A program made the position numbers and the translations under genes. Shown here one piece after another: positions 32,338 to 49,424 of a stretch of DNA of 64,000 nt; the stretch's first letter is position 1, and every line of letters starts with the position of its first letter. The DNA is taken from the sequence record PQ309151.1; one strand, given 5' to 3'. Under the pieces are notes generated by a model, which worked only from the letters and a program-made list of their open reading frames with translations, was not told where the DNA came from and ran no database searches.

Positions 32338-32364
32338 GTTATATATAGCTGAATTCTTCTGGAA
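32338..32364 (-). promoter_or_regulatory. Early-type phage promoter motif
   Basis: Minus strand TTCCAGAAGAATTCAGCTATATATAAC. Confidence 0.5.
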
Positions 32365-32390
32365 TGCGATTTTAGAGACAAAAAAATAAA

Positions 32391-32426
32391 GCACACTACC
32401 AGGGCTTTCGCCCTGGTAGTGTATGC
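32391..32426 (-). terminator. GAAA-loop terminator after the helicase gene
   Basis: ACACTACCAGGGC-TTTC-GCCCTGGTAGTGT; T-tract on the minus side and TATG on the plus side. Confidence 0.75.
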
Positions 32427-34067: not shown

Positions 34068-34104
34068 AGGATTGAGAATGCTGTATGTTTTATCGAGGTC
34101 CGAT

Positions 34105-34140
34105 TAGAAAAAATAATGGGAGGACCGAAGCCCTCCCATC
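34105..34140 (-). terminator. UUCG-loop rho-independent terminator
   Basis: Minus strand ATGGGAGGGC-TTCG-GTCCTCCCAT-TATTTTTT. Confidence 0.7.
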
Positions 34141-34143
34141 TCC

Positions 34144-34968
34144 TTATACTACTTCAGTAGGCGTGCGTGTACCAGACACGCCGTAGCCGTTTGCGTAAAA
34201 CTGCTTGATGAACGCATGCAGCTTCGGATCTTCCTGCATCTCAAATCGCAACGATTGCCAACCACGATCCTGGTAGACTCGCTGAATTTGAAAACGATAC
34301 GGCTGCGACTTGATGTGAACTTGAGATTCGCCTGATGGGTCGTTGTGACGGACCACATCCTTCGGCGTACCGCCAATCGTCCACGCTACCCGGATGGTGC
34401 GAATATCCGGATAGTAGTTCAAAGTCCGAGGAGTGTTGTAGATGGTGTTTTCCGCATCATCATGAAACCGAGTATAAACGGCAGGCCGATCATACTGGTA
34501 ATCGTTTTCACGCAACACTTCATGGATGTCGCATCCAGAAAGATGCTTGTACGCACTTGACATCAGAACGAGTTCCGGGTGCGCGAACACAACCTGCGGC
34601 TCGAAACTCTTTTCTTCACGCCCCATCGAACGATATAGCGGCATGTTATACAGGCATGCCAGATACGCTCTGCGCATTCCTTCAGCGATGCGCATCAGGG
34701 GACCCGGACCGATGCCCACCAATTGCTCAGGCACTTTGATCTTGGATGACCCGCTGTCGCCGCTTACAAAAAACGGAATCTGGATGAAACGAGCGTCACT
34801 GCCGACACCATAGTTCTCCAGATCACTCTTGTAAGACAGATACATCGAGTTCAACCCAGCAGGGCCGCCCGATAGAATTACTCCTTCCTTACCACTATTC
34901 AAACCGTCAAGAATAGGAAAGGTATCAACGATCAGGCACTGCATAACAACTTTTTCAACGTGATTCAT
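34144..34968 (-). CDS. Hypothetical protein
   Basis: 274 aa between the RNAP and helicase genes; no recognised motif. Confidence 0.6.
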   Translation of the reverse strand: MNHVEKVVMQCLIVDTFPILDGLNSGKEGVILSGGPAGLNSMYLSYKSDLENYGVGSDARFIQIPFFVSGDSGSSKIKVPEQLVGIGPGPLMRIAEGMRRAYLACLYNMPLYRSMGREEKSFEPQVVFAHPELVLMSSAYKHLSGCDIHEVLRENDYQYDRPAVYTRFHDDAENTIYNTPRTLNYYPDIRTIRVAWTIGGTPKDVVRHNDPSGESQVHIKSQPYRFQIQRVYQDRGWQSLRFEMQEDPKLHAFIKQFYANGYGVSGTRTPTEVV

Positions 34969-35053
34969 TCTAAAACTCCATTACGGATTTACGCACCCTA
35001 ATTAGGGAGCAAAGGGAACGCCGCTTTAACCCGCGGCTAAGGGTTTACTGCAC

Positions 35054-37060
35054 TTACACCTTCGGAAGCAATTCCGGATGAAGGATTGCGTCCATCGGAT
35101 GATCAGGTCTGTTCTTGTTAATGAACGACTCGACCGAACTGAAGATGATGGTGTGCTTTTCGAAAGCCATCGTAGCCGCGAGCGACCGCATAGCCATTGC
35201 ACGAGACATCACACCAATACCACGCTTACTCCACGGCTTGCTGAGTGCGTAGTTACCTTCCTTCGCAGAACGTACCGAGATGCCGTAAACTGCAACAGAG
35301 ACTTGTGCCATGTTGATGGTCAGTTCACTATTGAGAAGTTCGTAGGTATCCAGCAGGAATTGATCCACGTCGGTAAACTGATCGCGGATCTCTTCACGTT
35401 TCACTTCAGACTCAATGTGGGATTTGAAGCCCAGCGAGAAGTCAATCAGCGAATCGTTCTTCATCGGTACATATGCAAACGGTTTCGTGTAATCCCATTT
35501 GCTCATGTCGATCACGAAGTTGTTCTTATCGTCGATCTCCCAATACTGCTCCTTCACATACTTCAGCATGTCGTGACTGAACGACGCCATGCGTTTGCCG
35601 GTGCCGAGGATGAACGGGCGACGGTCCACATACTCGACCTTGCCTTTGTGTTCCACTTCCAGAGCCATCGAGCCGATTTCCGTAATACGACCGATAGAAA
35701 CACGATCGATATCGGTGAGATACATCACGTCGGTCAACGATTTTCCTTCGTCGTGACTGATGATCATCTTGTAATTCAAGCCCTTCATGTTCTCTGTGAA
35801 GTAATACGAAATACCATCGCGACCTACTTCGAGATATTGCGCATCTTCCTCAGCAATACGCAGCTTCTGCACAACGCTATTAGCCAGGTAATGCTTCTTC
35901 GACAACTGACGCTGAATAATGAACGCGTACAGGTCGGTGGTCATCAGCTGACCGAGATTGGTACGTTTGGGGATCGTGAGACTGATCGCGCCGAGACAGC
36001 ACTCACACACGCCATTCGGATCAGGGTGCGCGCAGTGGTTGATGTTGCGAGCATGAATGATTTTCCCGATCAGATGCTCATCGGTACTCTTCAATTCATA
36101 CAGCGTCTCGGTCGGATCTTCGGGCAGATAGTAATACACGCCCTCGTTCAGTTCCAGATCGCTTGCGGTGAGATCGTTCTGCTCACGAATCTTGAACGGA
36201 ATGAACCCCTTCGTACCACAGTCGCCAGGATGCACATTCATCAGGATTTCATTCAAAATCTCCTGACGCCGTGACTGATACACCGCATCTTCCAACTCAG
36301 CTTTGGTAGCTTCGATGGCTTGCGATGCCTTGCGCGACTCGACCATGTTGTCATACAGACTCCGATGGCCGTCGGTATAATTCGACATCAGCGGATACTT
36401 GAAGATCTCACCTCCCAGATCCTCAATGTAACCAGTCGGCGCAATTGCCTGAACCAACTGATTCGTCTTGATGACGCCCGCTCGCGCCATGCGAACCGCA
36501 CGGTTATTCATGATCTCAGGAATCTGGGACTTCGAGATCAGATTGGTAATGCCCTTAGTCGTTCCCAACACCGACTCTTCCGTGGGTCGCATCTTCTCCA
36601 ACAGTTCTGCGATCTCAGGGACCCTGAACAACTTGATGACGTCCTTGATGGACACAGTCGAAACCGACGTACCCATCTTGACTGCCAGCAGATTGTACAT
36701 GACATTCCCATGCTCGTAGAACTCTTTCGTGAGTTGTTCGAGCAGGTCATAATCTCCGAAGCGTCCCGTGGTCTTATACGCTTCGTAGATGTCCCAGTGA
36801 ATGATGTTCAACAAGTCCATGTGCATGTTCTTGTGGAACGTCTTCTTTGCCATCGAGTTGGAAATATGATGGCGCTTTTTCAACGGGATCGGACGATTGC
36901 GAATCCAATCCCACATCGGCATCGTGAAGTTGGTTTCACGATCGTTGGTGAGCAACTGGCCGTCCGAGAACTCCAGATAAAACTCACCCGTCAATACTTC
37001 ACTAATCTGCTTATGCGAATACTTCAGCAGATCTTCGGCTGGAAAGATAATGTCCGACAC
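35054..37060 (-). CDS. rpoC: Non-virion RNA polymerase beta' C-terminal subunit (phiKZ gp74-like)
   Basis: 668 aa; HPGDCGT, Zn site CAHPDPNGVCECCLG, trigger-loop-like QRQLSKKHY; directly follows the beta subunit gene. Confidence 0.85.
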   Translation of the reverse strand: MSDIIFPAEDLLKYSHKQISEVLTGEFYLEFSDGQLLTNDRETNFTMPMWDWIRNRPIPLKKRHHISNSMAKKTFHKNMHMDLLNIIHWDIYEAYKTTGRFGDYDLLEQLTKEFYEHGNVMYNLLAVKMGTSVSTVSIKDVIKLFRVPEIAELLEKMRPTEESVLGTTKGITNLISKSQIPEIMNNRAVRMARAGVIKTNQLVQAIAPTGYIEDLGGEIFKYPLMSNYTDGHRSLYDNMVESRKASQAIEATKAELEDAVYQSRRQEILNEILMNVHPGDCGTKGFIPFKIREQNDLTASDLELNEGVYYYLPEDPTETLYELKSTDEHLIGKIIHARNINHCAHPDPNGVCECCLGAISLTIPKRTNLGQLMTTDLYAFIIQRQLSKKHYLANSVVQKLRIAEEDAQYLEVGRDGISYYFTENMKGLNYKMIISHDEGKSLTDVMYLTDIDRVSIGRITEIGSMALEVEHKGKVEYVDRRPFILGTGKRMASFSHDMLKYVKEQYWEIDDKNNFVIDMSKWDYTKPFAYVPMKNDSLIDFSLGFKSHIESEVKREEIRDQFTDVDQFLLDTYELLNSELTINMAQVSVAVYGISVRSAKEGNYALSKPWSKRGIGVMSRAMAMRSLAATMAFEKHTIIFSSVESFINKNRPDHPMDAILHPELLPKV

Positions 37061-37063
37061 GAA

Positions 37064-39343
37064 TTAACCTTCCTTATTTTTAAAGAGATTGCGAACGAAG
37101 CCGCTGGCCTTGCGAGCCATATTCACTGCCGTGCGTGCCATACGTTGGAACGTGCTGGTCGCTTCGAACAGATACTCGCGCTTCTTGTCGATATAGGCAT
37201 CGCGGTGCTGGATGTCCGGGTCCTTGTACTTCTGGAATACGAACTTGTAGCCGTTGCAGTCGAGAATGTGCTTGAAGAGTTTGAGGGCCCGATTGTTGCC
37301 AAGCGGGACGTGATTGCGATCGACACCACGTTCGATGTTGGTCGGCGTTTTCGAATTGAGAATCGAGTACACATACTCGCGGTGAGTTGCGAGAGAATTG
37401 TTTCGATCCAGCAGATCGGCTGCCACCTGCCCACCACAATACGACATGATGATTCGAAGTTCTGCTTCGGAAATTGCCTTGACTGCCTGAGTCTTCGCCG
37501 GGTTCGAATATTTGTCCGAACTCGTAACCTGACCGAGAACACCCAGATGCTGAACCTTCGCCGTATTGGTTGCGATCCAGTCGTCCGAAATCTTCTCCAG
37601 CAACATGAAGTACTTGTGACCCATCTCGATGTCTTCTTCGGTCCATACCCACTGACCAGAATAATCGCGATATTCCACAGGCCCAACACGAGGCGGGAAT
37701 TCCTTTTCACATGCTTCAACCGCCTGACGCCATGCGGTCATGTTGTGCGTCGGACTGAGGATATGGATGCATGGGAACTTCATCAGCCATGACAAGTGCA
37801 GAGCACGTTTCTCATCCGAATCAAATTCCGGACTCGTATAGTGTTCATGCATCGTCGGACTGAGAATCTCATACAGACGTGTGAGATCGCTCCACACATT
37901 GTCGTATGCCGCTTGACGCTTCGGCATATCCTCGATGATCTGCTTTTGCGAAGGCTGATCATCCGGTCCAAGTTCGATCGTGTCACGAACCGTCACCAGG
38001 AACTCACGAGTTACCTGATTGAAATACGGCTCATACAGACCGCCGAAGTTTTGCCGGTTGAACGGCGACTCAGGCGACATGACCACTTCTGCGCGCACAC
38101 CGAATTCATTACGCGGCATTTCATTGTCAGGCAGAACATGGCACACAACGCCCTTATCGCCTGCACAACCAGTTGCCTTGTTACCGATGTTCGGCAGAAC
38201 CTTGTACTGAATCTTGAACTCGACACGCCAATCATCGATCGGTGCTTTGTGATACAATTTCTGCACCACATCGCCGATGTCATAATCGGTCATTGCACAT
38301 GCTTCGAGCACGAGCCGATGGAACTCATCGGTCAGATGCATTTCGCCACGACGCTGACGATACTGCTCGTTATAGACTGCCAGGATTTCCCGATAGAAGC
38401 GATCGGTCAATTCCTTGTAATACTCGACCTGATCATTCATGCCGTTAGGCAGTGAACGATTATCGTGATAGACCATCACGTCGATGATCGTGCCGTCTCC
38501 TGCACGAGTATACAGCTTGTCATCGTACGTCATGTCCAGCATCATGGTATCGGAAATACCCATGCTGCAGACCGCGAGCCGTTCATCGAACTCGCGAGTA
38601 GCCATCAGCAGGCCGTCAGGACGAATGCGCTCGCCAACATCCTTGAAGATTTTATAACGCTTGCGCGGGTCTTCACTCCGCGGGTCGCCGAACATATTCA
38701 GGCCATAACGGTTTTGACCCCAGCTGGCAGTACGAGTCTCAATCATGTTGAAACTCATCTTCTCCAAAGCCGATTCCGAAATCAGAATACCGTCTTCAGA
38801 TACTGCCGGGTGACTCATGTTGGCGAACATGAGATTCAGGCCATAACCATATCCGCCACCGGACTTGATGGACGGTGATGTGAGGAATTCAGTACCTTCC
38901 TCGAAACTTGCTCCTTTTGAAATGAGGCCGAATTCTTTGGTCTTGTTATATTTGAAGCCGAAGTACTGATGCTCCAGCGAATAGTCGCGCAGATCGAGAC
39001 AACCGATCAGGCGTTTCGGATGCTTCAGGTCAACATAGATCGCGATCCTTTGAGGATTCGTGATCGTGCTGCCGGCCGTACGCGATCGCGGAAAGCGATC
39101 GATCACTGCAATAATCTCGATGTCGCTCGGCGCTTTAACCGAGAAACAATACTCCCCGAATCGTGCTTCAGTTCCGGTCTGCCAGTAACGCTCCTCCGAA
39201 CCAGAGATGACCAGTGCTTGCGGCAAGTGCCCAGCGAACATCACCTTCCGAGGACCGCTATTTACATCTACCCATGGATCCATGGAATTGTTTGAGAGAA
39301 ACTCCGCGTGGAGCTCGCTTGGATGACGGGCTAATATTGTCAT
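37064..39343 (-). CDS. rpoB: Non-virion RNA polymerase beta C-terminal subunit (phiKZ gp71-73-like), uninterrupted
   Basis: 759 aa; SGPRKVM...H..Q, EDGILISES, GNKATGCAGDKGVV (cf. GDK...GNKGVV), ISEAELR. Confidence 0.9.
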   Translation of the reverse strand: MTILARHPSELHAEFLSNNSMDPWVDVNSGPRKVMFAGHLPQALVISGSEERYWQTGTEARFGEYCFSVKAPSDIEIIAVIDRFPRSRTAGSTITNPQRIAIYVDLKHPKRLIGCLDLRDYSLEHQYFGFKYNKTKEFGLISKGASFEEGTEFLTSPSIKSGGGYGYGLNLMFANMSHPAVSEDGILISESALEKMSFNMIETRTASWGQNRYGLNMFGDPRSEDPRKRYKIFKDVGERIRPDGLLMATREFDERLAVCSMGISDTMMLDMTYDDKLYTRAGDGTIIDVMVYHDNRSLPNGMNDQVEYYKELTDRFYREILAVYNEQYRQRRGEMHLTDEFHRLVLEACAMTDYDIGDVVQKLYHKAPIDDWRVEFKIQYKVLPNIGNKATGCAGDKGVVCHVLPDNEMPRNEFGVRAEVVMSPESPFNRQNFGGLYEPYFNQVTREFLVTVRDTIELGPDDQPSQKQIIEDMPKRQAAYDNVWSDLTRLYEILSPTMHEHYTSPEFDSDEKRALHLSWLMKFPCIHILSPTHNMTAWRQAVEACEKEFPPRVGPVEYRDYSGQWVWTEEDIEMGHKYFMLLEKISDDWIATNTAKVQHLGVLGQVTSSDKYSNPAKTQAVKAISEAELRIIMSYCGGQVAADLLDRNNSLATHREYVYSILNSKTPTNIERGVDRNHVPLGNNRALKLFKHILDCNGYKFVFQKYKDPDIQHRDAYIDKKREYLFEATSTFQRMARTAVNMARKASGFVRNLFKNKEG

Positions 39344-39402
39344 TTAACCATCCATTTCTGTTTTGAAAGTTGAACTGTCGAAGACTTCTAGACAGTATCT
39401 GT

Positions 39403-39429
39403 ATGATAATATATGAGTCTAAAATTTTA
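39403..39429 (-). promoter_or_regulatory. Early-type promoter-like motif upstream of the nvRNAP beta gene
   Basis: Minus strand TAAAATTTTAGACTCATATATTATCAT. Confidence 0.4.
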
Positions 39430-39440
39430 TAGGAAAGCTT

Positions 39441-39779
39441 ATGCCCGCCATCCTTGATAACATCGATGACCAGGGTCCGGCGATTTATTACACGGATGCC
39501 TTTAGGCAGATGGTCGAAGATCACCTGACTATTCTCAAGACAACGAATATCCAGACTCGCATCATCACCGATGATGATTGGGCTACATTGTACAAATATG
39601 AAGGAGACTTCTACGGCCTCCTGAACGCATTGCAGATCGGTCGACAGTATCACTGGACCGTAATGCGAATGAACGGTTATCGTAGCCGCTTCGAAGCTAC
39701 GGCCGATATCGCACAGTTGATCACTCCTGACTGGGCGTATGTGAACAAGCTGGCACAACTGGCTAAAGAGAAGAAGTAA
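39441..39779 (+). CDS. Small conserved protein, LysM-like/baseplate-wedge-like
   Basis: YKYEGDFYGLL...YHWTVMRMNG pattern resembles LysM-fold baseplate proteins; AGGAAAG RBS. Confidence 0.45.
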   Translation: MPAILDNIDDQGPAIYYTDAFRQMVEDHLTILKTTNIQTRIITDDDWATLYKYEGDFYGLLNALQIGRQYHWTVMRMNGYRSRFEATADIAQLITPDWAYVNKLAQLAKEKK

Positions 39780-39794
39780 AAGAACAAAAGAAAA

Positions 39795-39833
39795 TACTAC
39801 TGGATCCCGTGAGGGATCCAGTAGTACCTTATG
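39795..39833. terminator. Hairpin between convergent genes (GTGA loop, TATG)
   Basis: TACTACTGGATCCC-GTGA-GGGATCCAGTAGTA-cct-TATG. Confidence 0.7.
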
Positions 39834-39838
39834 CCGTC

Positions 39839-41476
39839 TTAACGACGGTAGTAGCGGTCGCGACGATCGTAGCGATCATCATCATCGTAATCGCGATCTC
39901 GACGAGCGCGGTCACGGATGTCGCGAATACCACGACGGCGACCACTACGATCGTAGTCGCGGTCATCCCGATCGTAATCACGGCCACGACGTGAACCGCG
40001 ATATTCACGATCTTCTTCGTCACGCAATGCCGAACGCAATGCCGGATTGTCTTCGAAGATGTCACCAGTACGACGGTCACGATCATCTCGGTCATCCCGG
40101 TCACGACGATCCCGCCGGTCGCGATCACGGTCTCGATCATCACGATCGTAATCACGATCGCGTGAACGACGATCATCATAGTCGCGTTCGCGACGACGTT
40201 CACGCAGCTCGCGCTCTTCTTCTTCACGCTCTTCGCGGCGCAGACGTTCTTCACGTTCACGCAACTCACGCTCACGCCGTTCAATTTCACGACGTTCGCG
40301 ATCTGCTGCACTGCGTGCTTCACGTTCACTCGTTACTGCCCGATCAGTACCGGAAGCGGGGGTTCTGTCGGGCTGTGCTTTTCCCAGGCTTTCACCAGTC
40401 GTCGGAGCCGCTGCCGGAGCACCGAGAACCATCCGACCACGCGGAGCCGAGGATGCTGCACTGGACGATGTAGCTGCGCCGAGACGGCCATGCCCACGGA
40501 CTTCTTCAGCGTGTCCCATGTCGCGTTCTTCACGACGGGTTTCACGACGCGCTTCGACTTCCTTTTCACGATCCATCTCTTCTCCGACTTCATTGGAGTT
40601 GAGAGCGGGAATCGTGCGGGCGAGCTTTTCGACCATGTCCTTGCTGTCGAAGATTTCCTTCCAGATCCCGAGTTCTTCCGGGAAAGTCAGGATTTCCGGC
40701 AGATCGACGATGCCCATGTAAGGCTGCGCCGTTTCCACCAGAGCGTCAACGACGTTCAGGACTGCACGCACGAGCGACTCGATGAACGGAGCCGAACGCG
40801 AGTTGATGCCGACGTTGAAGAATTCCGGATCTGCCAGCAGAGTCGGGAACACGAACTCGTAGAGCTTGATCAGCATCTCGCGGTTCTTGTTCGTCAACTT
40901 CACGCCGTTGATCGGTTCCTTCTCCGGCTTCTTCAGCGATTCGTAGATCGGGAATGTGACGATGCCAGCACGGCCATACGTCACACCCTTCACTACACCG
41001 CCGCGCTTGATGAAGATGTTGATGAACATGTCCGCATTGTTGCGGGACTTCGTCGACTTCTGGATCGATTCGAAATCCTTCACAAGCGACGCATCACACT
41101 TCGACAGCGCGTTCAGAACTTGCGACTGTTCGGTCGACAGGTTCTTCTGGTTGTCCTGGTCATACGCGATCGCAATGAGCTCCTTCATCAGGTAAGCGAT
41201 CGACGCGTTCAGACGTTGAACGAACTGGTCACGCAACGTGGCCACCATGTCACTGATGCCCAGGTTGAATGCTTCGCGCAGCGGATGGAAGCCCACGCGA
41301 GTTTTCCAGTCTTGATTCTTCATCTGCGCCCGGGTAGGCAGAACCACACGCATGCCATTGATCGTGGCAGGCATGAGTTGATCGCCGAGCTTTACCGACA
41401 CGTTCCCATCTTCGTCGGCAACCATCCACCCCAGGTCCAGCAGAATCTTGTAATAATCGATGATCTTATCACGCAT
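39839..41476 (-). CDS. Conserved nucleus-block protein (phiKZ gp70-like) with a long R/E/D mixed-charge C-terminal tail
   Basis: 545 aa; folded N-terminal ~330 aa, then ~160 aa of RE/RD repeats with DYD units. Confidence 0.7.
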   Translation of the reverse strand: MRDKIIDYYKILLDLGWMVADEDGNVSVKLGDQLMPATINGMRVVLPTRAQMKNQDWKTRVGFHPLREAFNLGISDMVATLRDQFVQRLNASIAYLMKELIAIAYDQDNQKNLSTEQSQVLNALSKCDASLVKDFESIQKSTKSRNNADMFINIFIKRGGVVKGVTYGRAGIVTFPIYESLKKPEKEPINGVKLTNKNREMLIKLYEFVFPTLLADPEFFNVGINSRSAPFIESLVRAVLNVVDALVETAQPYMGIVDLPEILTFPEELGIWKEIFDSKDMVEKLARTIPALNSNEVGEEMDREKEVEARRETRREERDMGHAEEVRGHGRLGAATSSSAASSAPRGRMVLGAPAAAPTTGESLGKAQPDRTPASGTDRAVTSEREARSAADRERREIERRERELREREERLRREEREEEERELRERRRERDYDDRRSRDRDYDRDDRDRDRDRRDRRDRDDRDDRDRRTGDIFEDNPALRSALRDEEDREYRGSRRGRDYDRDDRDYDRSGRRRGIRDIRDRARRDRDYDDDDRYDRRDRYYRR

Positions 41477-41489
41477 TTTTTAATTTACC

Positions 41490-42947
41490 TTAATAGCTGA
41501 AGTTACGGCCCGAACCGCCTGCGTTCATTCCAGTTGTCGAAAGGATTTCTTCGAACAGGCTGTTATAGTCACGGGCCGCATCGCGGATGTCTTGCCGACT
41601 GTTGGTCAGAATCGGCGACGTAAGAGAATTGCAGAAGCACGGGAATACATAGCGGCCATGGTTCTCGCCATCATAGAACAGCTTGAAGTCGATTTCCCCG
41701 AACACACGGCACTTGACTTGCAGGCCGATAGTTACGCGGTCTTCCGCGGTGATCGGATACATCAGTTCATCGATGATGCGATCTTCGAACTGGTCAACGA
41801 ACCAGGCCAGATCCACGTCCTTTACGAACGACTTCGCGGTTGTCGGAACGAACTCGAACGGCTGTTCGTGCGAGGCTGTCTGATTATGAATCTGGAAGTC
41901 CAGTCGATGAAGACCGGTTTCCATCATCAGAGCAGGAACAGCAACCTGAATCAGGGATGCAATCTTGTCCCATTCTTCACCGCCGTTCACATCGTTGGAA
42001 TCGAGGTGATACTCGGTCATCGCCTTCGACTCATTGTCGAACAACTTCGTTTCCGTACGACGTTCTGCTTCCGGATCGATATACAGCAGATCCTTGAACG
42101 TGAAGTTGTCGGTGGTGGTCGACAGATTGCGCGCGTTCGAGATTGCACGCAGGAATACGTCATCGGACGTATACGACTCCTGCACATAACCTTGAGCCGT
42201 CGCATTGACGTCGAGTACCGAACCGCCGAACTCGGTGTTGTCGATTGCCTTGCGGCGCGATTCGAGAACACGCGACATATACCGCGAACCGATACGATTC
42301 GAAGTCGAGCTCTTCACAGAGTTCTTCGACAGAGTCGTACGCAGATCCGTGAGATCGTCCACCAGCTGACCAGTCTCTTCAGCATCCAGCGACGAATAGA
42401 TATCTTCCGGACGCATCGTGTACAGCGTTTCGCCACGACGACGCAGGCCGGCGTTTTCACGATCCGACAGAACGTCTGCTGCGCGAGCCGGCATGTACAT
42501 GCGACGGAAACCGCCACGAGAATCCGGGATCATCCGTTCTTCGAGCATGAACGTATTGTTGACATAGAACTCCATGTCATGATCCACGTTACGCGTGGTA
42601 AAGCCGACCGAGTTGGTATAACCCATCACGACCTGCTTGAGCCTGTCGCCGGTTCCGATCTGGATATCCAGCGTCAGAATGAAACGACCACGCCGTGCAT
42701 CCCAACCATTCGGCACGTCAATGATGCCGCGCGTATTGAACGACGGAACCATGAACTGGTTGGCGATCTGTGCCAGCATCGACGGCGTGAAACGCCTGGT
42801 CTTTTTGTAACGTTCTTCGACACTGTCGAGGAGCCCACCGGAGAAGTGGGTTTCATACGGACGGAGAAACTGATCCTGAAACGTAGCCGACTCCGCAATG
42901 ATCAGCTCTTCAACGTAAATCTTGATGTCTTGACGACCTTGGCGCAT
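41490..42947 (-). CDS. picA: Phage-nucleus protein import factor PicA/Imp1-like (phiKZ gp69-like)
   Basis: 485 aa; FLRPYET and MRPEDI motifs; position between gp68-like and gp70-like genes (recalled synteny). Confidence 0.65.
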   Translation of the reverse strand: MRQGRQDIKIYVEELIIAESATFQDQFLRPYETHFSGGLLDSVEERYKKTRRFTPSMLAQIANQFMVPSFNTRGIIDVPNGWDARRGRFILTLDIQIGTGDRLKQVVMGYTNSVGFTTRNVDHDMEFYVNNTFMLEERMIPDSRGGFRRMYMPARAADVLSDRENAGLRRRGETLYTMRPEDIYSSLDAEETGQLVDDLTDLRTTLSKNSVKSSTSNRIGSRYMSRVLESRRKAIDNTEFGGSVLDVNATAQGYVQESYTSDDVFLRAISNARNLSTTTDNFTFKDLLYIDPEAERRTETKLFDNESKAMTEYHLDSNDVNGGEEWDKIASLIQVAVPALMMETGLHRLDFQIHNQTASHEQPFEFVPTTAKSFVKDVDLAWFVDQFEDRIIDELMYPITAEDRVTIGLQVKCRVFGEIDFKLFYDGENHGRYVFPCFCNSLTSPILTNSRQDIRDAARDYNSLFEEILSTTGMNAGGSGRNFSY

Positions 42948-42963
42948 CTTTTAGCCCTCTATT

Positions 42964-44535
42964 TTAAAAAGTGTACAACGAAATGTAGTTCGCATTTCGC
43001 CCTTGTACGTAAATGGCATAATCAGCCAATCGGTTCCGAATGTCGTACCCCACTCGGTAAGTTTTGTTTGCAGCGCTCTGACGAAACTCTGCGATTTGCT
43101 CCTCGGGCAGATTCAGAAACCATGTATGGTCAGACAACAGCTGAGCCAGATCCATGATCTCATTCACTGCATCGTTGTTGGGCTTTACCTGTTTCTTCGT
43201 CGGATGGCGACGGTAGTACGGGTAGAGCTCATTGAGTTTATCGATCTTGTCCTTCGTGATGTGGGCACGGGACTCCTGACTATACGAACCATAGCCTTCT
43301 GCGTTCATGCTGCGTGCAGTCGGCAAACCGGCCAGATCCTTGAACTCGGTGTTCCACAGAACGAACTGAGCGATGCCTGCCAAGCGCAAGATGCTGGACT
43401 TGTTGATGTCCCACAGCGCACGCGGACTGACGATCGGATTGACCACCCACTGAATCAGACGGATCTGACATTCTTCCAGTGTGTGGGTCGCCATGTGTTC
43501 TGCTGAGTCCATTGCCTTTTCGAGTTCTGCTGCCTGTTCTTCAGACAGTTCGTTCTGAAGCAACAGACGCGCTGCGATCTCCCGATAATACTCGGTCCAC
43601 TTTTCGATCGCAGTGAACTCACCCGGAGGCACCAGGGGTTTGTTCTTGTACTTCTCCGCACGAGACGAGGAGTCTTCACTCGAATCATCTTCGTTCGGAT
43701 TGATCTTCTCCAGAATCGCGTTCTGATGGCTGTCGTTTTGCGACAACCGATTGCGAAGCGACTTGTGGATGATCTGCACCAGATGCGTATCCGACGGATG
43801 TCGCGTGAAGCTTGCGATCACGAGAGCACGAACGAGAATGTTCGCAACCAGGTTCGTCTGAAACACATCCGAGCCAATGCCGTCGATCGAGGAACGGATG
43901 TTGATGTCGTCCTGCTTCACGTTCTTCGCCACATAGTGACTCAAACGCTGCATTGCAGGAGACTCTTCGATCGAAGACTTCGAGATCGTGAAATACGTAT
44001 TCAGATCTCGGAAGGTCGGGCCCGATTCCTTCTTGGTGATTTCCGAGAACTCACCCCAGATCGGCGCGATTGCTCGAAGCTTGATCACCATGAACACGAG
44101 TTCCCAATAGTCGGCGACCAGATAAGTCTGTTCGCGGCTGCCAGGTTTCTCGTGTGTGAACTTGTACTCCACATCCAGATCTTCAGGAATCCAGATGCCA
44201 CCATGATACCGAGTCCAACGCTCGAAATCTTCAGTATCGTGGATGTTGACGATCTCGTTGATGATCGGCCGCAAAGCCAGAATCAACGGATTCACATTGA
44301 ACGTTTCGTTGAAGACGTTCTTTGCCTGGCGATACAGATCGAAGATTTTGTCCTGAAGTTCGATGTCGATCCGCTGCCAATACTTATTGATTTGCTGAAA
44401 CGGTTCGTACGTTCCTTTCTTGAAAGCTTGTCCATAAACTGCTCCACTGAACTCCAGGGTCTCCCCACGGTGTTCGATGTAGATCATCCCGTTTCCAGCG
44501 ACGCCTGCGTGTTGGAATTTCGCTTGCATCGACAC
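42964..44535 (-). CDS. Non-virion RNAP promoter-specificity (sigma-like) subunit, phiKZ gp68-like
   Basis: 523 aa, matching the recalled size of gp68; helical; syntenic between ChmC-like and PicA-like genes. Confidence 0.7.
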   Translation of the reverse strand: MSMQAKFQHAGVAGNGMIYIEHRGETLEFSGAVYGQAFKKGTYEPFQQINKYWQRIDIELQDKIFDLYRQAKNVFNETFNVNPLILALRPIINEIVNIHDTEDFERWTRYHGGIWIPEDLDVEYKFTHEKPGSREQTYLVADYWELVFMVIKLRAIAPIWGEFSEITKKESGPTFRDLNTYFTISKSSIEESPAMQRLSHYVAKNVKQDDINIRSSIDGIGSDVFQTNLVANILVRALVIASFTRHPSDTHLVQIIHKSLRNRLSQNDSHQNAILEKINPNEDDSSEDSSSRAEKYKNKPLVPPGEFTAIEKWTEYYREIAARLLLQNELSEEQAAELEKAMDSAEHMATHTLEECQIRLIQWVVNPIVSPRALWDINKSSILRLAGIAQFVLWNTEFKDLAGLPTARSMNAEGYGSYSQESRAHITKDKIDKLNELYPYYRRHPTKKQVKPNNDAVNEIMDLAQLLSDHTWFLNLPEEQIAEFRQSAANKTYRVGYDIRNRLADYAIYVQGRNANYISLYTF

Positions 44536-44568
44536 TCCTTTTAAAAATTTCTTAGCTATTACAGACGA

Positions 44569-44595
44569 ATGATATATCGTTGAAATCTGTTTAAA
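44569..44595 (-). promoter_or_regulatory. Early-type phage promoter motif
   Basis: Minus strand TTTAAACAGATTTCAACGATATATCAT, a near copy of 54325-54351. Confidence 0.65.
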
Positions 44596-44606
44596 AGAGG
44601 GTTTTC

Positions 44607-44632
44607 ACATGGAGGGCGAAAGCCCTCCATGT
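44607..44632. terminator. GAAA-loop hairpin
   Basis: ACATGGAGGGC-GAAA-GCCCTCCATGT. Confidence 0.65.
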
Positions 44633-44654
44633 GTTTAGTTTATGTGCTTACTGC

Positions 44655-45422
44655 TTAGAAGCTGATGTCGTCGAAATCGGAACCGCCTCCACCGAAGCCG
44701 CCACCCGATGATTCGCTATCATCGCTACCGCCACCACTGTTCCAGCCACCGCCTCCACCGCCACCGCCGTTACCACCGCGGTTATAGTTGCCGCCACCGC
44801 CTCCACCATTGCCCTTCCAGTTACCACCGCCGCCACCGCCGTTCGGCGTCTTCGGTTCCGGATGCTTGTACGTTGCCACCGAGACCATCGCGACGATACG
44901 CGTGACCAGGTTGTACATCGCACGCGCGGCGACGACCGAGACTGCTGCTTCCGACATCGGACCATCACCGCTGCCCAGGTGATGCCAGTACGTCGGCGCG
45001 AACGGGAAGTAGATCTTCGGACGACCGGACTTCAGCAGGTCTTCGACCATGATGTACACGACGCCGCCGGGGTTCTTGCCGACTTCGACGCGAGCGATGT
45101 CCGACTTCTTCTTGTCTTGACCGACCGGCGCCTGACAGAAGACGCTGAACTTGCACGGGTCCTTGCTTTCGGTCGCGATCTTCAGGTTCTCCATCAGGAT
45201 CTGCAGATCGAAGATACCGAACTTCGCCTGGATGCGGCCGAAGTTGTTGTCCTTGTCGTTGGGGTCACGGGTGTAGACCGTGATGCCCGGGTTGTCGTTG
45301 TTTGCGTAGAAGTGCAGTTCCGAGAAACCCTTTACGCCCTTCACGGGACAAGGGGTCGAAAGCACGATGCGCTTCGAATCCAGAAGGTTCTTGTCGCGTT
45401 GCTTGGGCTTGAAGTCAGCCAT
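44655..45422 (-). CDS. chmC: ChmC-like nucleic-acid-binding protein with G/N-rich tail ending SDFDDISF
   Basis: 255 aa; beta-rich N-domain (NNPGITVY-type motif), then a Gly/Asn/aromatic IDR; syntenic just upstream of the gp68-like gene. Confidence 0.6.
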   Translation of the reverse strand: MADFKPKQRDKNLLDSKRIVLSTPCPVKGVKGFSELHFYANNDNPGITVYTRDPNDKDNNFGRIQAKFGIFDLQILMENLKIATESKDPCKFSVFCQAPVGQDKKKSDIARVEVGKNPGGVVYIMVEDLLKSGRPKIYFPFAPTYWHHLGSGDGPMSEAAVSVVAARAMYNLVTRIVAMVSVATYKHPEPKTPNGGGGGGNWKGNGGGGGGNYNRGGNGGGGGGGGWNSGGGSDDSESSGGGFGGGGSDFDDISF

Positions 45423-45484
45423 GGTTGCCTCTTCGAAAATGGTTGGTTATCGTACTCCAGATCATAGATTGACCTGGTAAAAGA

Positions 45485-46321
45485 TTACATCATGTCCTTC
45501 ACCGTAGCGGTGTAGAACGGGTTTTTCAACTGATCCAGATTCATCCGGATACGAGCATCTGTCGTGAGAGCGCTCCAGCCGTATTTCGTTGCGAGTTCGA
45601 CAATGGCTTTTCTCAGCTTCGAGTCCATCGGCGAGAAGAATTCTTTTTCACCAAATATCCGGGCGAAGTATTGGGTGAAAGGAATCATCGAGAGTTCTTT
45701 CCCGTTGTTGAGTTTGGTGTACCACAACGAACGGTTCTTGATTGCTCCCGTGTGCGATTCGATCAGGTCCAGTTCCTCGAAGGCTTTATAGGACAACAGA
45801 TCCCACGCAATGTGAGTTTGGATCAGAAAGTTTCCATCCTTCTTATCCGGAGAGATGTCGGTATCGAATCCTTTTACGTAATCCTTACCGACGTCATTCA
45901 GGAATTGCTGAATGGAGTCTTCCATTCGCTTACGTTCTTCCACCTGTTTCGGCGTGATGTCCGATTTGAAGATGGAGTGATGCTTGTATCGCGAATAGAT
46001 GGCTTTATAATTGCAGAGATACAAGGTCGGGTCGATCTTGGTATCTGCGAGAACACGTTTCACCGCTTCCCATTCGTCATGCATGAGTTCCGCAATGACA
46101 CCCGGTTTAAGCAGAATATTGATGTCGGCCGAGAAAGAGCCAACGATGTTGCGGTACAGAGTCCTGGCATTCATCCAGTAATGCTGGTATTTCAGGTGAG
46201 GCGACTCATCCCACTTACGTTCAGGATGAATGTTCATCAGGCTTTCGAGAGCCAGTGAAGTCGGCACATTCACCGGATACTGCCCACGCGCCATCTTTTC
46301 AGTGAATGTGAAGACGTTCAT
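45485..46321 (-). CDS. Conserved core protein, possibly PIN/5'-nuclease-like fold (phiKZ gp66-like)
   Basis: 278 aa; TSLALESL...YWMNARTLYRNI motif recalled from phiKZ-like phages; fold assignment tentative. Confidence 0.45.
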   Translation of the reverse strand: MNVFTFTEKMARGQYPVNVPTSLALESLMNIHPERKWDESPHLKYQHYWMNARTLYRNIVGSFSADINILLKPGVIAELMHDEWEAVKRVLADTKIDPTLYLCNYKAIYSRYKHHSIFKSDITPKQVEERKRMEDSIQQFLNDVGKDYVKGFDTDISPDKKDGNFLIQTHIAWDLLSYKAFEELDLIESHTGAIKNRSLWYTKLNNGKELSMIPFTQYFARIFGEKEFFSPMDSKLRKAIVELATKYGWSALTTDARIRMNLDQLKNPFYTATVKDMM

Positions 46322-46518
46322 TGTATTTTATCCGTTAGCAAATGACGGGGGAGTCCGATGGAGTCCCAGAACTGTTGGAAGAAGTTCCACAGATCTTCTT
46401 CAAATTGTCTTTGATGAGCCAGGCTACCATAAGGAGATACCAGGCTAATCTCGAAAGGCGGATCGACATCTTTTTGCGGACCGATCACCACGGGCAAAGA
46501 ACGATCTGGATTGATCAT
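46318..46518 (-). CDS. Small hypothetical protein
   Basis: 66 aa; ATGA overlaps at both ends; GAAGGAG RBS. Confidence 0.55.
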   Translation of the reverse strand: MINPDRSLPVVIGPQKDVDPPFEISLVSPYGSLAHQRQFEEDLWNFFQQFWDSIGLPRHLLTDKIQ

Positions 46519-47018
46519 ACTCGAATGACTCCTTCTCGAATCAGACTATGGAACCACTCATGGTAGAACATAGCCTCTTCCGGCGTGATGTCAGTCGGGA
46601 ATGTCGGAATCGCCCGATGGCGTTTCGACTGATCGCCGTACGGCAAAATGTCGCTCGTGCCCAATGGGATCGACGGTTTGAAACGGAAACGCGAAGGACC
46701 TTTCGGCGGCAACGGATACTTCTGAAGAATCTTGTCGTAAGCCGCCCGCTGAATTTCTGCGACCGTCAGCGACTTGCCTGTAGCTCTCGACTTATAGACG
46801 AAATGCCATACGCCGGTGTCCGGGTTCACTGCCGTACCAACCTGAATTTCTTCAGGGTTGATGTAGAATTGGTTCGAGATCCAGTCCGTGCCTGGTGCTC
46901 GAACTTGTATTTCGTCATCGTGCCAATAACCGCCATACTTCGGTTTTTCTTGCTTTGGCAACGGCTCATGACCGTTACGCTTAAACTGATTGACGTGGGC
47001 GAAATTAATCTTGCTCAT
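46515..47018 (-). CDS. Hypothetical protein
   Basis: 167 aa; AGGAAA RBS; coupled to its neighbours. Confidence 0.55.
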   Translation of the reverse strand: MSKINFAHVNQFKRNGHEPLPKQEKPKYGGYWHDDEIQVRAPGTDWISNQFYINPEEIQVGTAVNPDTGVWHFVYKSRATGKSLTVAEIQRAAYDKILQKYPLPPKGPSRFRFKPSIPLGTSDILPYGDQSKRHRAIPTFPTDITPEEAMFYHEWFHSLIREGVIRV

Positions 47019-47157
47019 TTCGTTTCCTGTATTCTTTCAGGACTTCGTTCTTAATGACATCTGTGATTGTTTCCCCGATACGACGCTGGGCTTCAGGTGT
47101 CACGTCAAGGCATTTCTCAAGGTCAACCTCGACCGATTCGTATTGTTCAGCAGCCAC
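47005..47157 (-). CDS. Small protein below the ORF-track cutoff (50 aa)
   Basis: GTG start with GAGGT RBS right after the sbcD stop; MAAEQYESVEVDLEKCLDVTPEAQRRIGETITDVIKNEVLKEYRKRNEQD; fills the gap and overlaps the next start. Confidence 0.55.
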   Translation of the reverse strand: MAAEQYESVEVDLEKCLDVTPEAQRRIGETITDVIKNEVLKEYRKRNEQD

Positions 47158-47164
47158 AGATACC

Positions 47165-48361: not shown

Positions 48362-48986
48362 TGTCGAGCATATTCCCGAGATTCAGGATCTTGTCGTGCT
48401 TGCCATAGCGCTCGAAGATCGCATTCCAGATACGCATGTTCGCGTAGACTTGCTCAGTCGGCTTGTCCTTGATGTGCAGACCCTGGAGCTTCTTGCTCAG
48501 GAAATGCTGGGAGCCGGCTGCGTCAAATTCCTTCAGACGCGAGTAGTGGCGTTCGATCAACGTCATCGATTCGCCGCCCGGTTTCGACTGTTCGAGAACC
48601 GACGTATCGAAAAGCGGAGGTACCGTGAAGAGAACAGCACCATCTTCAGCGATGATGTCGACCGAAACCTTCTCACCACCTGCAACCTTTTCGAGCCAGG
48701 TGCGATAGTTCACTTCGGCGGTCGGCTGGACTTCACCTGCGAAGAGCGGAAGGAAGTGCTCGATGAAGAGCGTTTCCGGGAACTGCGCGTTCTGCTCGAT
48801 TTGCGTGAGCGAGTTCGCGATGCCACGAATGTCGATGCCGATACCCATGCGACGTTGCTTCTGGAAGGTGGCAAAAACATCCATTGCCGCTTTCTGACGC
48901 GGATGCGGTTGAGCGACGTCCGTGGGCGTTTCGGGTTCGCGGGAGACCGTACGGTCCAGTTTATTGTCGAGTTCGCGTTGGTTCAT
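48270..48986 (-). CDS. Conserved core protein of unknown function
   Basis: 238 aa; PETLFIEHFLPLF and VLFTVPPL motifs recalled from phiKZ-like phages. Confidence 0.6.
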   Translation of the reverse strand: MNQRELDNKLDRTVSREPETPTDVAQPHPRQKAAMDVFATFQKQRRMGIGIDIRGIANSLTQIEQNAQFPETLFIEHFLPLFAGEVQPTAEVNYRTWLEKVAGGEKVSVDIIAEDGAVLFTVPPLFDTSVLEQSKPGGESMTLIERHYSRLKEFDAAGSQHFLSKKLQGLHIKDKPTEQVYANMRIWNAIFERYGKHDKILNLGNMLDNDPNKDKAIDLGGSSGANAADVGDYELDTD

Positions 48987-49399: not shown

Positions 49400-49424
49400 T
49401 TTCAGATCCAGAAAGCAAAAAAAA

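What the first reader, a model, noticed from the sequence alone, without database searches (positions are those of the whole stretch)
39839..40330. Nuclear-speckle-like Arg/Asp mixed-charge domain in a phage-nucleus gene
About 160 C-terminal aa progress from RE repeats (RERREIERRERELREREERLRREEREEEERELRERRRE) to RD/DYD repeats (RDYDDRRSRDRDYDRDDRDRDRDRRDRRDRDDRDDRDRR...RDYDDDDRYDRRDRYYRR). R/D-R/E mixed-charge domains are established drivers of condensation and nuclear-speckle targeting in eukaryotic splicing factors such as U1-70K. Here the gene sits directly after PicA-like and before the RNAP subunits. Inference: convergent evolution of a condensate or RNA-handling module at or inside the phage nucleus, or a selective filter linked to protein import or mRNA export.
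Basis: partly seen in the sequence, partly recalled or inferred. Interest (0 to 1): 0.7.

Follow-up and report, generated by a model that had tools for sequence, protein, structure and literature searches.

The report
Charged tail on phage-nucleus shell protein
A jumbo phage of Ralstonia encodes a phage-nucleus shell-associated protein whose floppy tail is built almost entirely of balanced arginine and acidic residues, and the ends of the shell protein chimallin have the same make-up in the same phages, which suggests the tail sticks to the shell by like-with-like contacts.

Summary
Window 39839-40330 (- strand) encodes the last 163 residues of a 545-aa protein: R 38%, D 24%, E 14%, Y 6%, no K, net charge zero. 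It is the only such stretch in six frames of the window.

The window is Ralstonia phage RsoM3USA, which encodes the nuclear-shell protein chimallin. The gene is the ortholog of phiKZ gp70 / PhiPA3 gp64. That protein is reported at the nuclear shell but is otherwise uncharacterised. It lies between the PicA/Imp1 ortholog and the nvRNAP subunits.

Three points go beyond the finding:
- **The tail is a family feature.** Over 1,500 cluster representatives match the N-domain; the 180 inspected carry a low-complexity tail. Most tails are uncharged (Q/P/M/G, aromatic). Only the RSL2-like clade has the R/D/E version.
- **The tail is under selection.** It has low dN/dS, tight charge neutrality and an embedded motif kept family-wide.
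- **Chimallin changed with it.** In this clade the disordered chimallin ends are also R/D/E/Y-rich. Tail and chimallin-end composition match within phages.

There is no homology to U1-70K. The best reading is a multivalent adhesive tail that partners chimallin's tails. A role in RNA handling or as a transport filter is untested.

The parts
39839..41476 (-). Whole gene, 545 aa. It is the ortholog of phiKZ gp70 / PhiPA3 gp64 / 201phi2-1 gp126, a protein associated with the phage-nucleus shell.
   Evidence: ORF and annotated CDS. It matches phrog_29928 (E 0) and phrog_3520 (E 2e-52). tblastn hits PHIKZ070 and PhiPA3 064. Synteny is shown.
40592..41476 (-). Folded N-terminal domain, residues 1-295. 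This is the part conserved across the whole family.
   Evidence: The AF2 model of this domain has pLDDT 94.9 and pTM 0.92. 1,525 cluster representatives match it at E<=1e-3. Foldseek finds no PDB match (best E 0.4).
40325..40591 (-). Linker, residues 296-384. It holds a charged helix (297-318) and then an A/S/G/P/T-rich disordered stretch. That stretch contains a motif conserved within the clade around residues 345-354.
   Evidence: Column shares are: G352 is kept in 97% and G347 in 88% of clade members.
40151..40324 (-). R/E segment, residues 385-442, predicted as one long, almost fully charged alpha-helix of the single-alpha-helix type.
   Evidence: AF2 predicts helix 385-442, with pLDDT about 89-95 over residues 390-430. 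Most columns of 392-430 are charged in 80-100% of clade members, and the hydrophobic positions are kept in at most 34% of them.
40070..40150 (-). First R/D(Y) disordered tract, residues 443-469.
   Evidence: Residues 426-470 are R 47% and D 40%. pLDDT is below 50 over residues 450-467.
40013..40069 (-). Island of non-repetitive sequence, residues 470-488. It holds the motif kept across the whole family (window residues 472-481) and a short predicted helix (478-488).
   Evidence: P478 is kept in 100% of clade members and 88% of the other family members. N477 is kept in 97% / 44% and L480 in 97% / 45%, and the column is hydrophobic at 473/474 in 83% / 74% of the others. Invariant and near-invariant columns are listed.
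39842..40012 (-). Second R/D/Y disordered tract, residues 489-545. It contains a clade-conserved stretch (residues 512-523) and an aromatic-arginine C-terminus.
   Evidence: Composition is and pLDDT is below 50. C-terminal ends of the relatives are listed.
39791..39830 (-). Terminator-like hairpin with an 18-pair stem and a T-rich tail. It starts 9 bases after the stop codon, between this gene and the convergent gene 39441..39779 (+).
   Evidence: Found by the consensus scan. This is a pattern match only.
52274..54220 (-). Chimallin (ChmA), the major nuclear-shell protein. Its N-terminal about 55 residues (54056..54220) are R/E/D/Q-rich. Its last 30 residues (52277..52366) are R/D/Y-rich with no K.
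   Evidence: It matches Pfam PF25677 at E 1.4e-20 and the phrog 'nuclear shell protein' at E 1.5e-189. The ends are compared with relatives.
41490..42947 (-). PicA/Imp1 ortholog (phiKZ gp69-like). It lies directly upstream, separated by a 13-base gap.
   Evidence: BLASTP against phiKZ gp69 gives E 9e-31. It matches phrog_3141.
42964..44535 (-). Ortholog of phiKZ gp68, a subunit of the non-virion RNA polymerase.
   Evidence: BLASTP gives E 7e-36. The role of gp68 is stated in the paper read.
44655..45422 (-). ChmC/Imp6 ortholog (phiKZ gp67-like). It keeps a Gly/Asn-rich tail, so it did not take part in the R/D switch.
   Evidence: BLASTP gives E 5e-6. Tails are shown.
35054..39343 (-). Two nvRNAP subunit genes downstream: 37064..39343 (RNAP beta) and 35054..37060 (PHROGs 'RNA polymerase beta subunit', annotated beta prime in the record).
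   Evidence: Pfam RNA_pol_Rpb2_6. phrog_3295 and phrog_3015. Annotation.

Best explanation
The tail is the clade-specific form of a low-complexity C-terminal extension found in every member I inspected of the phiKZ gp70 / PhiPA3 gp64 family of phage-nucleus shell-associated proteins.

Anatomy. The protein has these parts in order:
- a conserved folded N-domain (residues 1-295) with no solved structural relative;
- a flexible linker;
- a stiff, about 58-residue, all-charged R/E helix;
- an R/D(Y) disordered tract;
- a short motif kept across the whole family (residues 472-481);
- a second R/D/Y tract that ends in an aromatic-arginine C-terminus.

Proposed mechanism. The tail acts as a multivalent, weakly adhesive 'like-with-like' arm. 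Its many arginine-carboxylate and arginine-tyrosine contacts would engage the equally R/D/E/Y-rich disordered N- and C-terminal ends of chimallin on the shell, and other copies of itself. This would hold the protein, and whatever partner reads the conserved motif, in a layer on the nuclear shell. The exact charge balance would keep it from sticking indiscriminately to nucleic acids.

In other lineages the same job would be done with uncharged Q/P/M/G tails carrying evenly spaced aromatic residues, matched to Gly- and aromatic-rich chimallin ends.

Shown:
- composition, conservation, purifying selection and charge neutrality of the tail;
- the family-wide motif;
- co-variation of tail composition with chimallin-end composition;
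- shell localisation of one homolog, from the literature.

Inferred:
- physical contact between the tail and chimallin's ends;
- self-association of the tail;
- any role in transport.
For: 1. Orthology and place. The gene matches phrog_3520 (E 2e-52) and PHIKZ070 / PhiPA3 064 by tblastn. Synteny gp67-gp68-gp69-gp70-nvRNAP holds in phiKZ, PhiPA3, RP12, Goslar, FLC9, RAY and two metagenome contigs. PhiPA3 gp64 localised to the nuclear shell, came down with ChmB, and was reported as early-expressed (PMC10643120).

2. The tail is a family trait. Of 180 fetched relatives, 36 have mixed-charge tails (charged fraction about 0.6). All of these have N-domains at least 45% identical to the query. The other 144 have tails with a charged fraction that is mostly 0.03-0.13 (up to 0.24) and are rich in Q/P/N/M/G/A. 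The uncharged tails hold about 9% aromatic residues, and these are spaced more evenly than in shuffles in 93% of sequences.

3. Selection on the tail:
- dN/dS is 0.13-0.19 in the tail against 0.09-0.15 in the N-domain.
- Net charge per residue of the last 165 residues lies between -0.01 and +0.04 in all 36 clade members. By my estimate, unconstrained drift of about 124 charged residues would give a spread near 0.07.
- R makes up a median 93% of the basic residues.

4. Embedded motif. P478 is kept in 100% of clade members and 88% of the other family members, with N477, L480 and the hydrophobic positions 473/474 also kept.

5. Chimallin co-variation:
- All 26 chimallin homologs of the clade (54-98% identity) have R/D/E-rich N-tails. 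Their last 30 residues have a charged fraction of 0.37-0.77 with no K.
- Chimallins of RP12, PhiPA3, Goslar, RAY and FLC9 have Gly-rich ends with a charged fraction of 0.00-0.13.
- Over six lineages, tail composition matches the chimallin-end composition of the same phage better than in all but 4 of 720 permutations. Without the mixed-charge phage the figure is 5 of 120.

6. The switch is not proteome-wide:
- The tail of the ChmC ortholog stays Gly/Asn-rich.
- RP12, which infects the same host species, has an uncharged tail.
- In the whole RsoM3USA record only three annotated proteins carry long R/D-rich segments.

7. In 201phi2-1, chimallin residues 1-47 are an N-terminal tail whose deletion did not change incorporation into the shell. 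They could therefore be free to bind partners (bioRxiv 10.1101/2022.02.14.480162).
Against: - No physical interaction has been tested. Everything about contact rests on composition.
- The R/D switch is one evolutionary event, so its co-occurrence with R/D chimallin ends counts once. The permutation test uses only six lineages, and two of them (RP12, PhiPA3) show no match.
- Order-specific similarity between the tail and chimallin's C-end is no better than in composition-matched shuffles (z from -0.7 to 2.1). There is therefore no evidence for mimicry of a specific chimallin segment.
- Well-mixed, neutral polyampholytes (kappa-like value 0.07) are expected to be expanded and soluble. Alternating R/D peptides did not phase-separate in one study (PMC9324279).
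- Chimallin's C-terminal segments are used for lattice contacts. In the assembled shell they may not be free.
- It is unknown which part of gp64 brings it to the shell.
Confidence: 0.42

Rival explanations
1. The tail is an entropic tether. It is only a soluble, flexible, neutral spacer, with a stiff R/E helix as a ruler, that presents the conserved motif (residues 472-481) and the C-terminal aromatic end to a partner. On this view its amino-acid flavour is free to drift and has no cohesive role.
For: - Tail composition varies enormously across the family, while the motif and an aromatic residue near the C-terminus persist.
- The charges are well mixed and balanced, which predicts an expanded coil.
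- Alternating R/D peptides did not phase-separate in one study.
- The R/E segment has no conserved hydrophobic seam, as expected for a spacer helix.
Against: - dN/dS is as low as in the folded domain.
- R is strictly preferred over K, Y content is kept at 4-7%, and neutrality holds within 0.04 in 36 diverged sequences.
- Uncharged relatives have evenly spaced aromatic residues.
- Composition tracks chimallin's ends. A pure spacer would have no reason to do that.
Confidence: 0.27
2. The tail is a speckle-like condensate or RNA-handling module. It drives condensation with RNA at or inside the phage nucleus and helps with mRNA processing or export.
For: - The tail meets the published mixed-charge-domain criteria and uses R only. 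Synthetic R/D repeats condense in a length-dependent way.
- The gene sits in one block with the RNA-binding ChmC ortholog and the nvRNAP subunits.
- mRNA export through the shell is still poorly understood (PMC12908238).
Against: - Net charge is exactly zero and the charges alternate. This pattern lacked the RNA affinity seen with blocky peptides.
- There is no RNA-binding domain.
- Most family members have uncharged tails, so RNA binding through arginine cannot be the family's shared function.
- The longest pure R/D tracts are 39 and 57 residues. Pure repeats needed about 80 residues (RD40) to condense in vitro.
Confidence: 0.12
3. The tails form a selective barrier. Anchored at the shell, they would form a cohesive mesh that acts as a permeability filter for protein import or mRNA export. 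This would be analogous to FG-nucleoporins or to the R/D-rich fungal septal-pore plug protein SPA-5.
For: - The family has a low-complexity tail on a shell-associated anchor, next to the import factor PicA/Imp1.
- Uncharged relatives have evenly spaced aromatic residues.
- No transport channel has yet been seen in the shell.
Against: - phiKZ gp70 did not bind Imp1 in E. coli, and the import selections described in that preprint yielded mutations in imp1-imp5, none of which is gene 70.
- The tail contains no FG repeats; it has a single F.
- Pores have not been observed, and the stoichiometry of this protein at the shell is unknown.
Confidence: 0.1
4. The feature is an artefact: a non-coding or frame-shifted repeat, or a recent slippage expansion with no function.
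For: - The low-complexity sequence produces long ORFs in several frames on both strands.
- dS in the tail is higher than in the N-domain.
Against: - The same frame is kept in 36 relatives down to 45% N-domain identity, with low dN/dS.
- There are no long DNA tandem repeats, and several codons are used for each of R and D.
- Specific positions are conserved.
Confidence: 0.01

Closest known systems
PhiPA3 gp64 / phiKZ gp70 / 201phi2-1 gp126 family (phrog_3520, phrog_29928): uncharacterised phage-nucleus shell-associated proteins
   Same: The N-domain is orthologous at 25-33% identity. The gene holds the same position between PicA/Imp1 and the nvRNAP genes. The architecture is the same: a folded domain followed by a low-complexity tail with an embedded motif containing the conserved proline and an aromatic residue near the C-terminus.
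   Different: The tail chemistry differs. Here it is R/D/E with a charged fraction of 0.76. In phiKZ and PhiPA3 it is Q/M/P/G/A with a charged fraction of about 0.03. The tail here is about 100 residues longer because of the R/E helix and the first R/D tract.
   Same: The tail meets the numerical definition, uses R rather than K, is near neutral, and is rich in R-D dipeptides, with 43 RD/DR pairs.
   Different: No homology was found: there is no Pfam domain and no PDB sequence hit. U1-70K did not come back as a hit, so that likeness is compositional only. About a third of the tail is predicted to be helical. The host is a bacterium with no speckles, and the domain hangs on a shell-associated anchor.
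Fungal septal-pore protein SPA-5 mixed-charge domain, as described in bioRxiv 10.1101/771592
   Same: It is an R/D-rich domain of a protein that sits at a passage between compartments. It is reported to form a hydrogel associated with plugs that gate channels.
   Different: It is known to me here only through that paper's description. I made no sequence comparison. No pore or plug is known at the phage shell.
ChmC (PhiPA3 gp61 / phiKZ gp67 / Imp6), the phage-nucleus-associated RNA-binding protein
   Same: It lies in the same conserved gene block, is shell- or nucleus-associated, and has a folded domain followed by a low-complexity tail.
   Different: The sequence is unrelated (separate PHROG families). 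Its tail stays Gly/Asn-rich in every phage examined, including this one.
FG-nucleoporins
   Same: They are low-complexity regions anchored at the boundary of a genome-holding compartment. The uncharged relatives of this protein have evenly spaced aromatic residues.
   Different: There are no FG repeats. The profile hit to Nup205 (E 2.6e-5) lies in the low-complexity tail columns, and I take it to be compositional. No pore is known.
Charged single alpha-helix (ER/K-type) domains
   Same: Residues 385-442 are almost wholly E and R and are predicted as one long helix with high confidence. There is no conserved hydrophobic seam.
   Different: It uses R only, not K. Opposite charges at i+3/i+4 are no more frequent than in shuffles (z = 0.6). 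No experimental helix data exist.

Membership tests
phiKZ gp70 / PhiPA3 gp64 family | Homologous N-terminal domain | tested here: met
   phrog_3520 matches at E 2e-52 over residues 4-386. tblastn hits PHIKZ070 at E 8e-20 and PhiPA3 064 at E 5e-24. Foldseek against BFVD returns only orthologs from jumbo phages.
phiKZ gp70 / PhiPA3 gp64 family | Position between the PicA/Imp1 gene and the nvRNAP subunit genes | tested here: met
   Shown. The same order is seen in RP12, Goslar, FLC9, RAY and metagenome contigs.
phiKZ gp70 / PhiPA3 gp64 family | Localisation to the nuclear shell during infection | not testable with these tools
   This is reported for PhiPA3 gp64 only (PMC10643120).
Arginine-enriched mixed-charge domain (Greig et al.) | A 60-residue window with charged fraction >= 0.7 and a positive/negative ratio of 1 +/- 0.3 | tested here: met
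   90 windows spanning residues 370-545 qualify. 36 of 36 clade members qualify and 0 of 144 other relatives do.
Arginine-enriched mixed-charge domain (Greig et al.) | Arginine rather than lysine as the basic residue | tested here: met
   The tail has 62 R and 0 K. The clade median of R/(R+K) is 0.93.
Arginine-enriched mixed-charge domain (Greig et al.) | Intrinsic disorder | tested here: inconclusive
   AF2 gives pLDDT below 50 for residues 450-467 and 488-545. It also predicts a confident helix for 385-442. These are predictions only.
Arginine-enriched mixed-charge domain (Greig et al.) | Condensation or incorporation into a condensate | not testable with these tools
The published length dependence is given.
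U1-70K-type splicing factor (homology) | RNA-recognition motif or U1 snRNP 70K domains, or any sequence relation | tested here: not met
   No Pfam family passes its cut-off; the only match is DUF3682 at E 0.007, below cut-off. The tail finds 0 PDB sequences at E <= 1.
FG-nucleoporin-like barrier | Multiple FG (or similar Phe-based) repeats in a disordered region | tested here: not met
   The tail has one F and no FG dipeptide. The Nup205 profile hit lies in the low-complexity tail columns.
Coiled coil | Conserved heptad a/d hydrophobic positions | tested here: not met
   There is only one hydrophobic position per seven residues (398, 405, 412). Each is kept in at most 34% of clade members.
Charged single alpha-helix | A long helix of E plus basic residues without a hydrophobic seam | tested here: inconclusive
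   The AF2 helix and the charged columns fit. The i+3/i+4 opposite-charge count is not above shuffles. There are no experimental data.

The most novel reading that the evidence does not exclude
The low-complexity tails of the gp70/gp64 family, together with chimallin's own disordered ends, form a cohesive surface phase on the phage nucleus. This phase would contribute to selective passage of proteins or mRNA. Its chemistry would be interchangeable between lineages: aromatic/Gln/Met-based in most, and arginine-carboxylate-based in the RSL2-like clade. If so, a bacterial virus evolved a nucleoporin-like or speckle-like material twice over with different building blocks.
Probability: 0.15. Interest if true: 0.9.

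Novelty: new variant of a known kind. Interest (0 to 1): 0.62.

Why it matters
How proteins and mRNA cross the chimallin shell is an open question, and no channel has been seen. This family is one of the few conserved shell-associated proteins without a function.

Three results give concrete, checkable handles on how accessory proteins engage the shell:
- Every inspected member carries a selected low-complexity tail.
- The tail has one family-wide motif.
- The tail's chemistry tracks the chemistry of chimallin's own disordered ends.

The mixed-charge clade is a natural experiment in which the same module was rebuilt from a completely different set of residues. That is useful for asking which physical property matters. 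I found no paper describing an arginine-rich mixed-charge domain in a phage protein, so it also appears to extend such domains to phages.

Tried and rejected
- **Homology of the tail to known proteins.** phmmer of the tail against PDB sequences gave 0 hits. Pfam gave only a sub-threshold DUF3682 match.
- **Profile search of the family against PDB.** It hit Nup205 and Nup155 of entry 9hcj (E 2.6e-5 and 0.024). The matches lie in the low-complexity tail columns, so I rejected them as compositional.
- **Fold of the N-domain.** Two Foldseek searches of PDB, one with the full model and one with the N-domain alone, found nothing better than E 0.05 and 0.4.
- **Mimicry of chimallin's C-terminal segment by the tail.** Local alignment scores are no better than composition-matched shuffles. 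Rejected.
- **Coiled coil in the R/E segment.** Rejected, because there is no conserved heptad core.
- **Recent repeat expansion.** Rejected.
- **Host as the determinant of tail chemistry.** Rejected, because Ralstonia phage RP12 has an uncharged tail.
- **A proteome-wide R/D bias in disordered regions.** Rejected, because the ChmC tail stays Gly-rich.
- **Literature.** One search for alternative names of the protein returned only unrelated papers. The Tn-seq preprint and the antisense-oligomer paper do not mention the ortholog in their main text. The core-genome preprint gave nothing on it.
Full report
**What the sequence is.** The window is identical to Ralstonia phage RsoM3USA (PQ309151.1); window coordinate + 124000 gives the record coordinate. 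Its close relatives are RSL2, RSF1, the FLC phages and SURPRISE13, of genus Chiangmaivirus. The window encodes chimallin at 52274..54220 (- strand; Pfam PF25677 at E 1.4e-20, phrog 'nuclear shell protein' at E 1.5e-189), so this is a chimallin-encoding, presumably nucleus-forming, phage.

The finding lies in ORF 39839..41476 (- strand, 545 aa), annotated as a hypothetical protein.

**Check of the observation.**
- Residues 383-545 (window 39842..40330) are R 38%, D 24%, E 14%, Y 6% and K 0. The charged fraction is 0.76 and the net charge is zero.
- It is the only 40-residue stretch with at least 60% charged residues in all six frames of the window.
- Opposite charges are adjacent more often than in shuffles (z = 3.7).
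- It is not a recent DNA repeat expansion. R and D are each written with several codons.
- The long ORFs in other frames and on the other strand are not annotated. I take them to be side effects of the composition, because the R/D frame has dN/dS of 0.13-0.19 against four orthologs.

**Identity of the gene.**
- PHROGs places the protein in phrog_29928 and phrog_3520.
- tblastn finds the N-terminal 300 residues in 148 phage records, including PHIKZ070 and PhiPA3 gene 064.
- The neighbours are orthologs of phiKZ gp67 (ChmC/Imp6), gp68 (an nvRNAP subunit) and gp69 (PicA/Imp1). The nvRNAP genes follow downstream.
- The same gene order is seen in phiKZ, PhiPA3, RP12, Goslar, FLC9, RAY and metagenome contigs.
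- A terminator-like hairpin follows the stop codon.

Published work gives three facts about the orthologs. PhiPA3 gp64 localised to the nuclear shell, was recovered with ChmB, and was reported as early-expressed, but has no known function (PMC10643120). It is shown again as nucleus-associated in the ChmC paper. phiKZ gp70 did not co-purify with Imp1 in E. coli (bioRxiv 10.1101/2024.03.27.586873). I found no paper that discusses its tail.

**Anatomy.** With a 145-sequence alignment, AlphaFold2 gives the following picture:
- residues 1-290 form a very confident alpha/beta domain;
- residues 297-318 form a helix;
- residues 319-384 are disordered;
- residues 385-442, the R/E part, form one long helix (pLDDT about 89-95 over 390-430);
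- residues 443-477 are disordered;
- residues 478-488 form a short helix;
- residues 489-545 are disordered.

The N-domain modelled alone has pLDDT 94.9 and pTM 0.92. It has no match among solved structures (best Foldseek E 0.4). Among predicted viral structures it matches only its own orthologs.

Most columns of 392-430 in the R/E helix are charged in 80-100% of clade members. Its few hydrophobic positions are kept in at most a third of them. It therefore looks like a charged single helix, not a coiled coil.

**The tail is a family trait with exchangeable chemistry.** A full scan of 1.84 billion cluster representatives with the N-domain found 1,525 matches. I inspected 180 relatives.
- All have about 295 residues of N-domain followed by 80-265 residues of low-complexity tail.
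- 36 have R/D/E tails. These are exactly the ones whose N-domain is at least 45% identical to the query.
- The other 144 have tails with a charged fraction that is mostly 0.03-0.13 (up to 0.24) and are rich in Q, P, N, M, G and A. phiKZ, PhiPA3, RP12, RAY, Goslar and FLC9 are of this second kind.
- RP12 infects Ralstonia too, so the host does not dictate the chemistry.
- The uncharged tails hold about 9% aromatic residues, and these are spaced more evenly than chance in 93% of sequences.

**Conserved positions inside the tail.** An island of ordinary sequence sits at residues 470-488. Within it:
- P478 is kept in 100% of the clade and 88% of the rest of the family;
- N477 is kept in 97% and 44%;
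- L480 is kept in 97% and 45%;
- positions 473/474 are hydrophobic in 83% and 74% of the rest.

Most family members also end with an aromatic residue within the last six positions (138 of 180). Within the clade, further stretches are kept around residues 345-354 and 512-523 and at the C-terminus.

**Selection.**
- Tail dN/dS (0.13-0.19) is close to that of the folded domain (0.09-0.15).
- Net charge per residue of the last 165 residues stays between -0.01 and +0.04 in all 36 clade members. Tyrosine stays at 2-7%. Arginine is the basic residue.
- The tail meets the published numerical definition of a mixed-charge domain over residues 370-545. All 36 clade members do, and none of the 144 others does.

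**Chimallin changed in step.** Chimallin of this phage begins with about 55 residues rich in R, E, D and Q (charged fraction 0.42). It ends with 30 residues rich in R, D and Y (charged fraction 0.47, no K).
- All 26 chimallin homologs of the clade (54-98% identity) share this.
- Chimallins of RP12, PhiPA3, Goslar, RAY and FLC9 end in Gly-rich segments with a charged fraction of 0.00-0.13.
- Across six lineages, the composition of the gp70-like tail matches that of chimallin's ends in the same phage better than in all but 4 of 720 permutations. Leaving out the mixed-charge phage, the figure is 5 of 120. RP12 and PhiPA3 do not match.
- The tail of the ChmC ortholog stays Gly/Asn-rich in every phage examined. 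The switch is therefore not a general bias of disordered regions in this phage.
- Scanning the whole RsoM3USA record piece by piece, only three annotated proteins have long R/D-rich segments: this one, chimallin, and XHV16044.1.
- In 201phi2-1, chimallin residues 1-47 are an N-terminal tail whose deletion did not change incorporation into the shell. The C-terminal segments make lattice contacts (bioRxiv 10.1101/2022.02.14.480162).

**Interpretation.** I think the tail is most likely a multivalent, weakly adhesive arm. It would partner chimallin's disordered ends, and other copies of itself, through many arginine-carboxylate and arginine-tyrosine contacts. Other lineages would do the same with aromatic/Gln/Met chemistry.

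The composition, conservation, selection and co-variation are shown. The contact itself is inferred. A test for order-specific mimicry of chimallin's C-end by the tail was negative, so the likeness is one of composition.

The main rival is a passive tether that only presents the motif. The balanced, alternating charge pattern argues against strong RNA binding, and most relatives have no arginine-rich tail at all.

**Comparison with known systems.**
- The protein is a member of the gp70/gp64 family by homology and synteny.
- It qualifies compositionally as an arginine-enriched mixed-charge domain.
- It is not related to U1-70K or any splicing factor.
- It is not an FG-type protein.
- The R/D-rich fungal SPA-5 domain, reported to form a hydrogel associated with plugs that gate channels, is an intriguing functional parallel that I could not test.

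Noticed in passing
window 52274..54220 (-), especially 54056..54220 and 52277..52366: Chimallin of this phage, and of all 26 clade homologs, has R/E/D/Q-rich N-terminal and R/D/Y-rich C-terminal ends with no lysine. Five chimallins from other lineages have Gly-rich, nearly uncharged ends.
   Followed up: yes
outside the window: PQ309151.1 71431..73512 (-), locus L023:22432-24513: A third protein, XHV16044.1 (693 aa), sits next to a polymerase gene. It has an internal R/D-rich low-complexity stretch of about 140 residues. It is specific to the same clade, and only its C-terminal domain is found in FLC9 and LucasX.
   Followed up: partly
window 39441..39779 (+): A small convergent gene (112 aa, phrog_3455, function unknown) lies between the gp70-like gene and the nvRNAP beta gene. 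A gene of similar size and opposite orientation sits at the same place in RP12, Goslar, FLC9, RAY and a metagenome contig.
   Followed up: no
window 39839..41476 (-): Synonymous divergence is uneven along the gene. Against RSL2 and FLC6, dS is about 0.18 in the N-domain, 0.53 in the linker and 0.8 in the tail. Possible causes are alignment ambiguity in the repeats, local recombination, or a higher mutation rate. None was resolved.
   Followed up: no
window 44655..45422 (-): The ChmC ortholog ends in a tail that is 51% glycine, with scattered W/Y/F/N and an acidic C-terminus. The same style is seen in phiKZ, PhiPA3, Goslar and FLC9.
   Followed up: partly
alignment A2, tail columns: The family profile matched the nucleoporins Nup205 and Nup155 of PDB entry 9hcj (E 2.6e-5 and 0.024). 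The match lies in the low-complexity tail columns, and I take it to be compositional.
   Followed up: partly
window 1..64000: No tRNA or tmRNA genes are present in the window. The window also holds a divergent family B DNA polymerase (58250..60454), an SbcD-like nuclease (47165..48361), an nvRNAP subunit (50120..51745) and a helicase (32427..34067).
   Followed up: no
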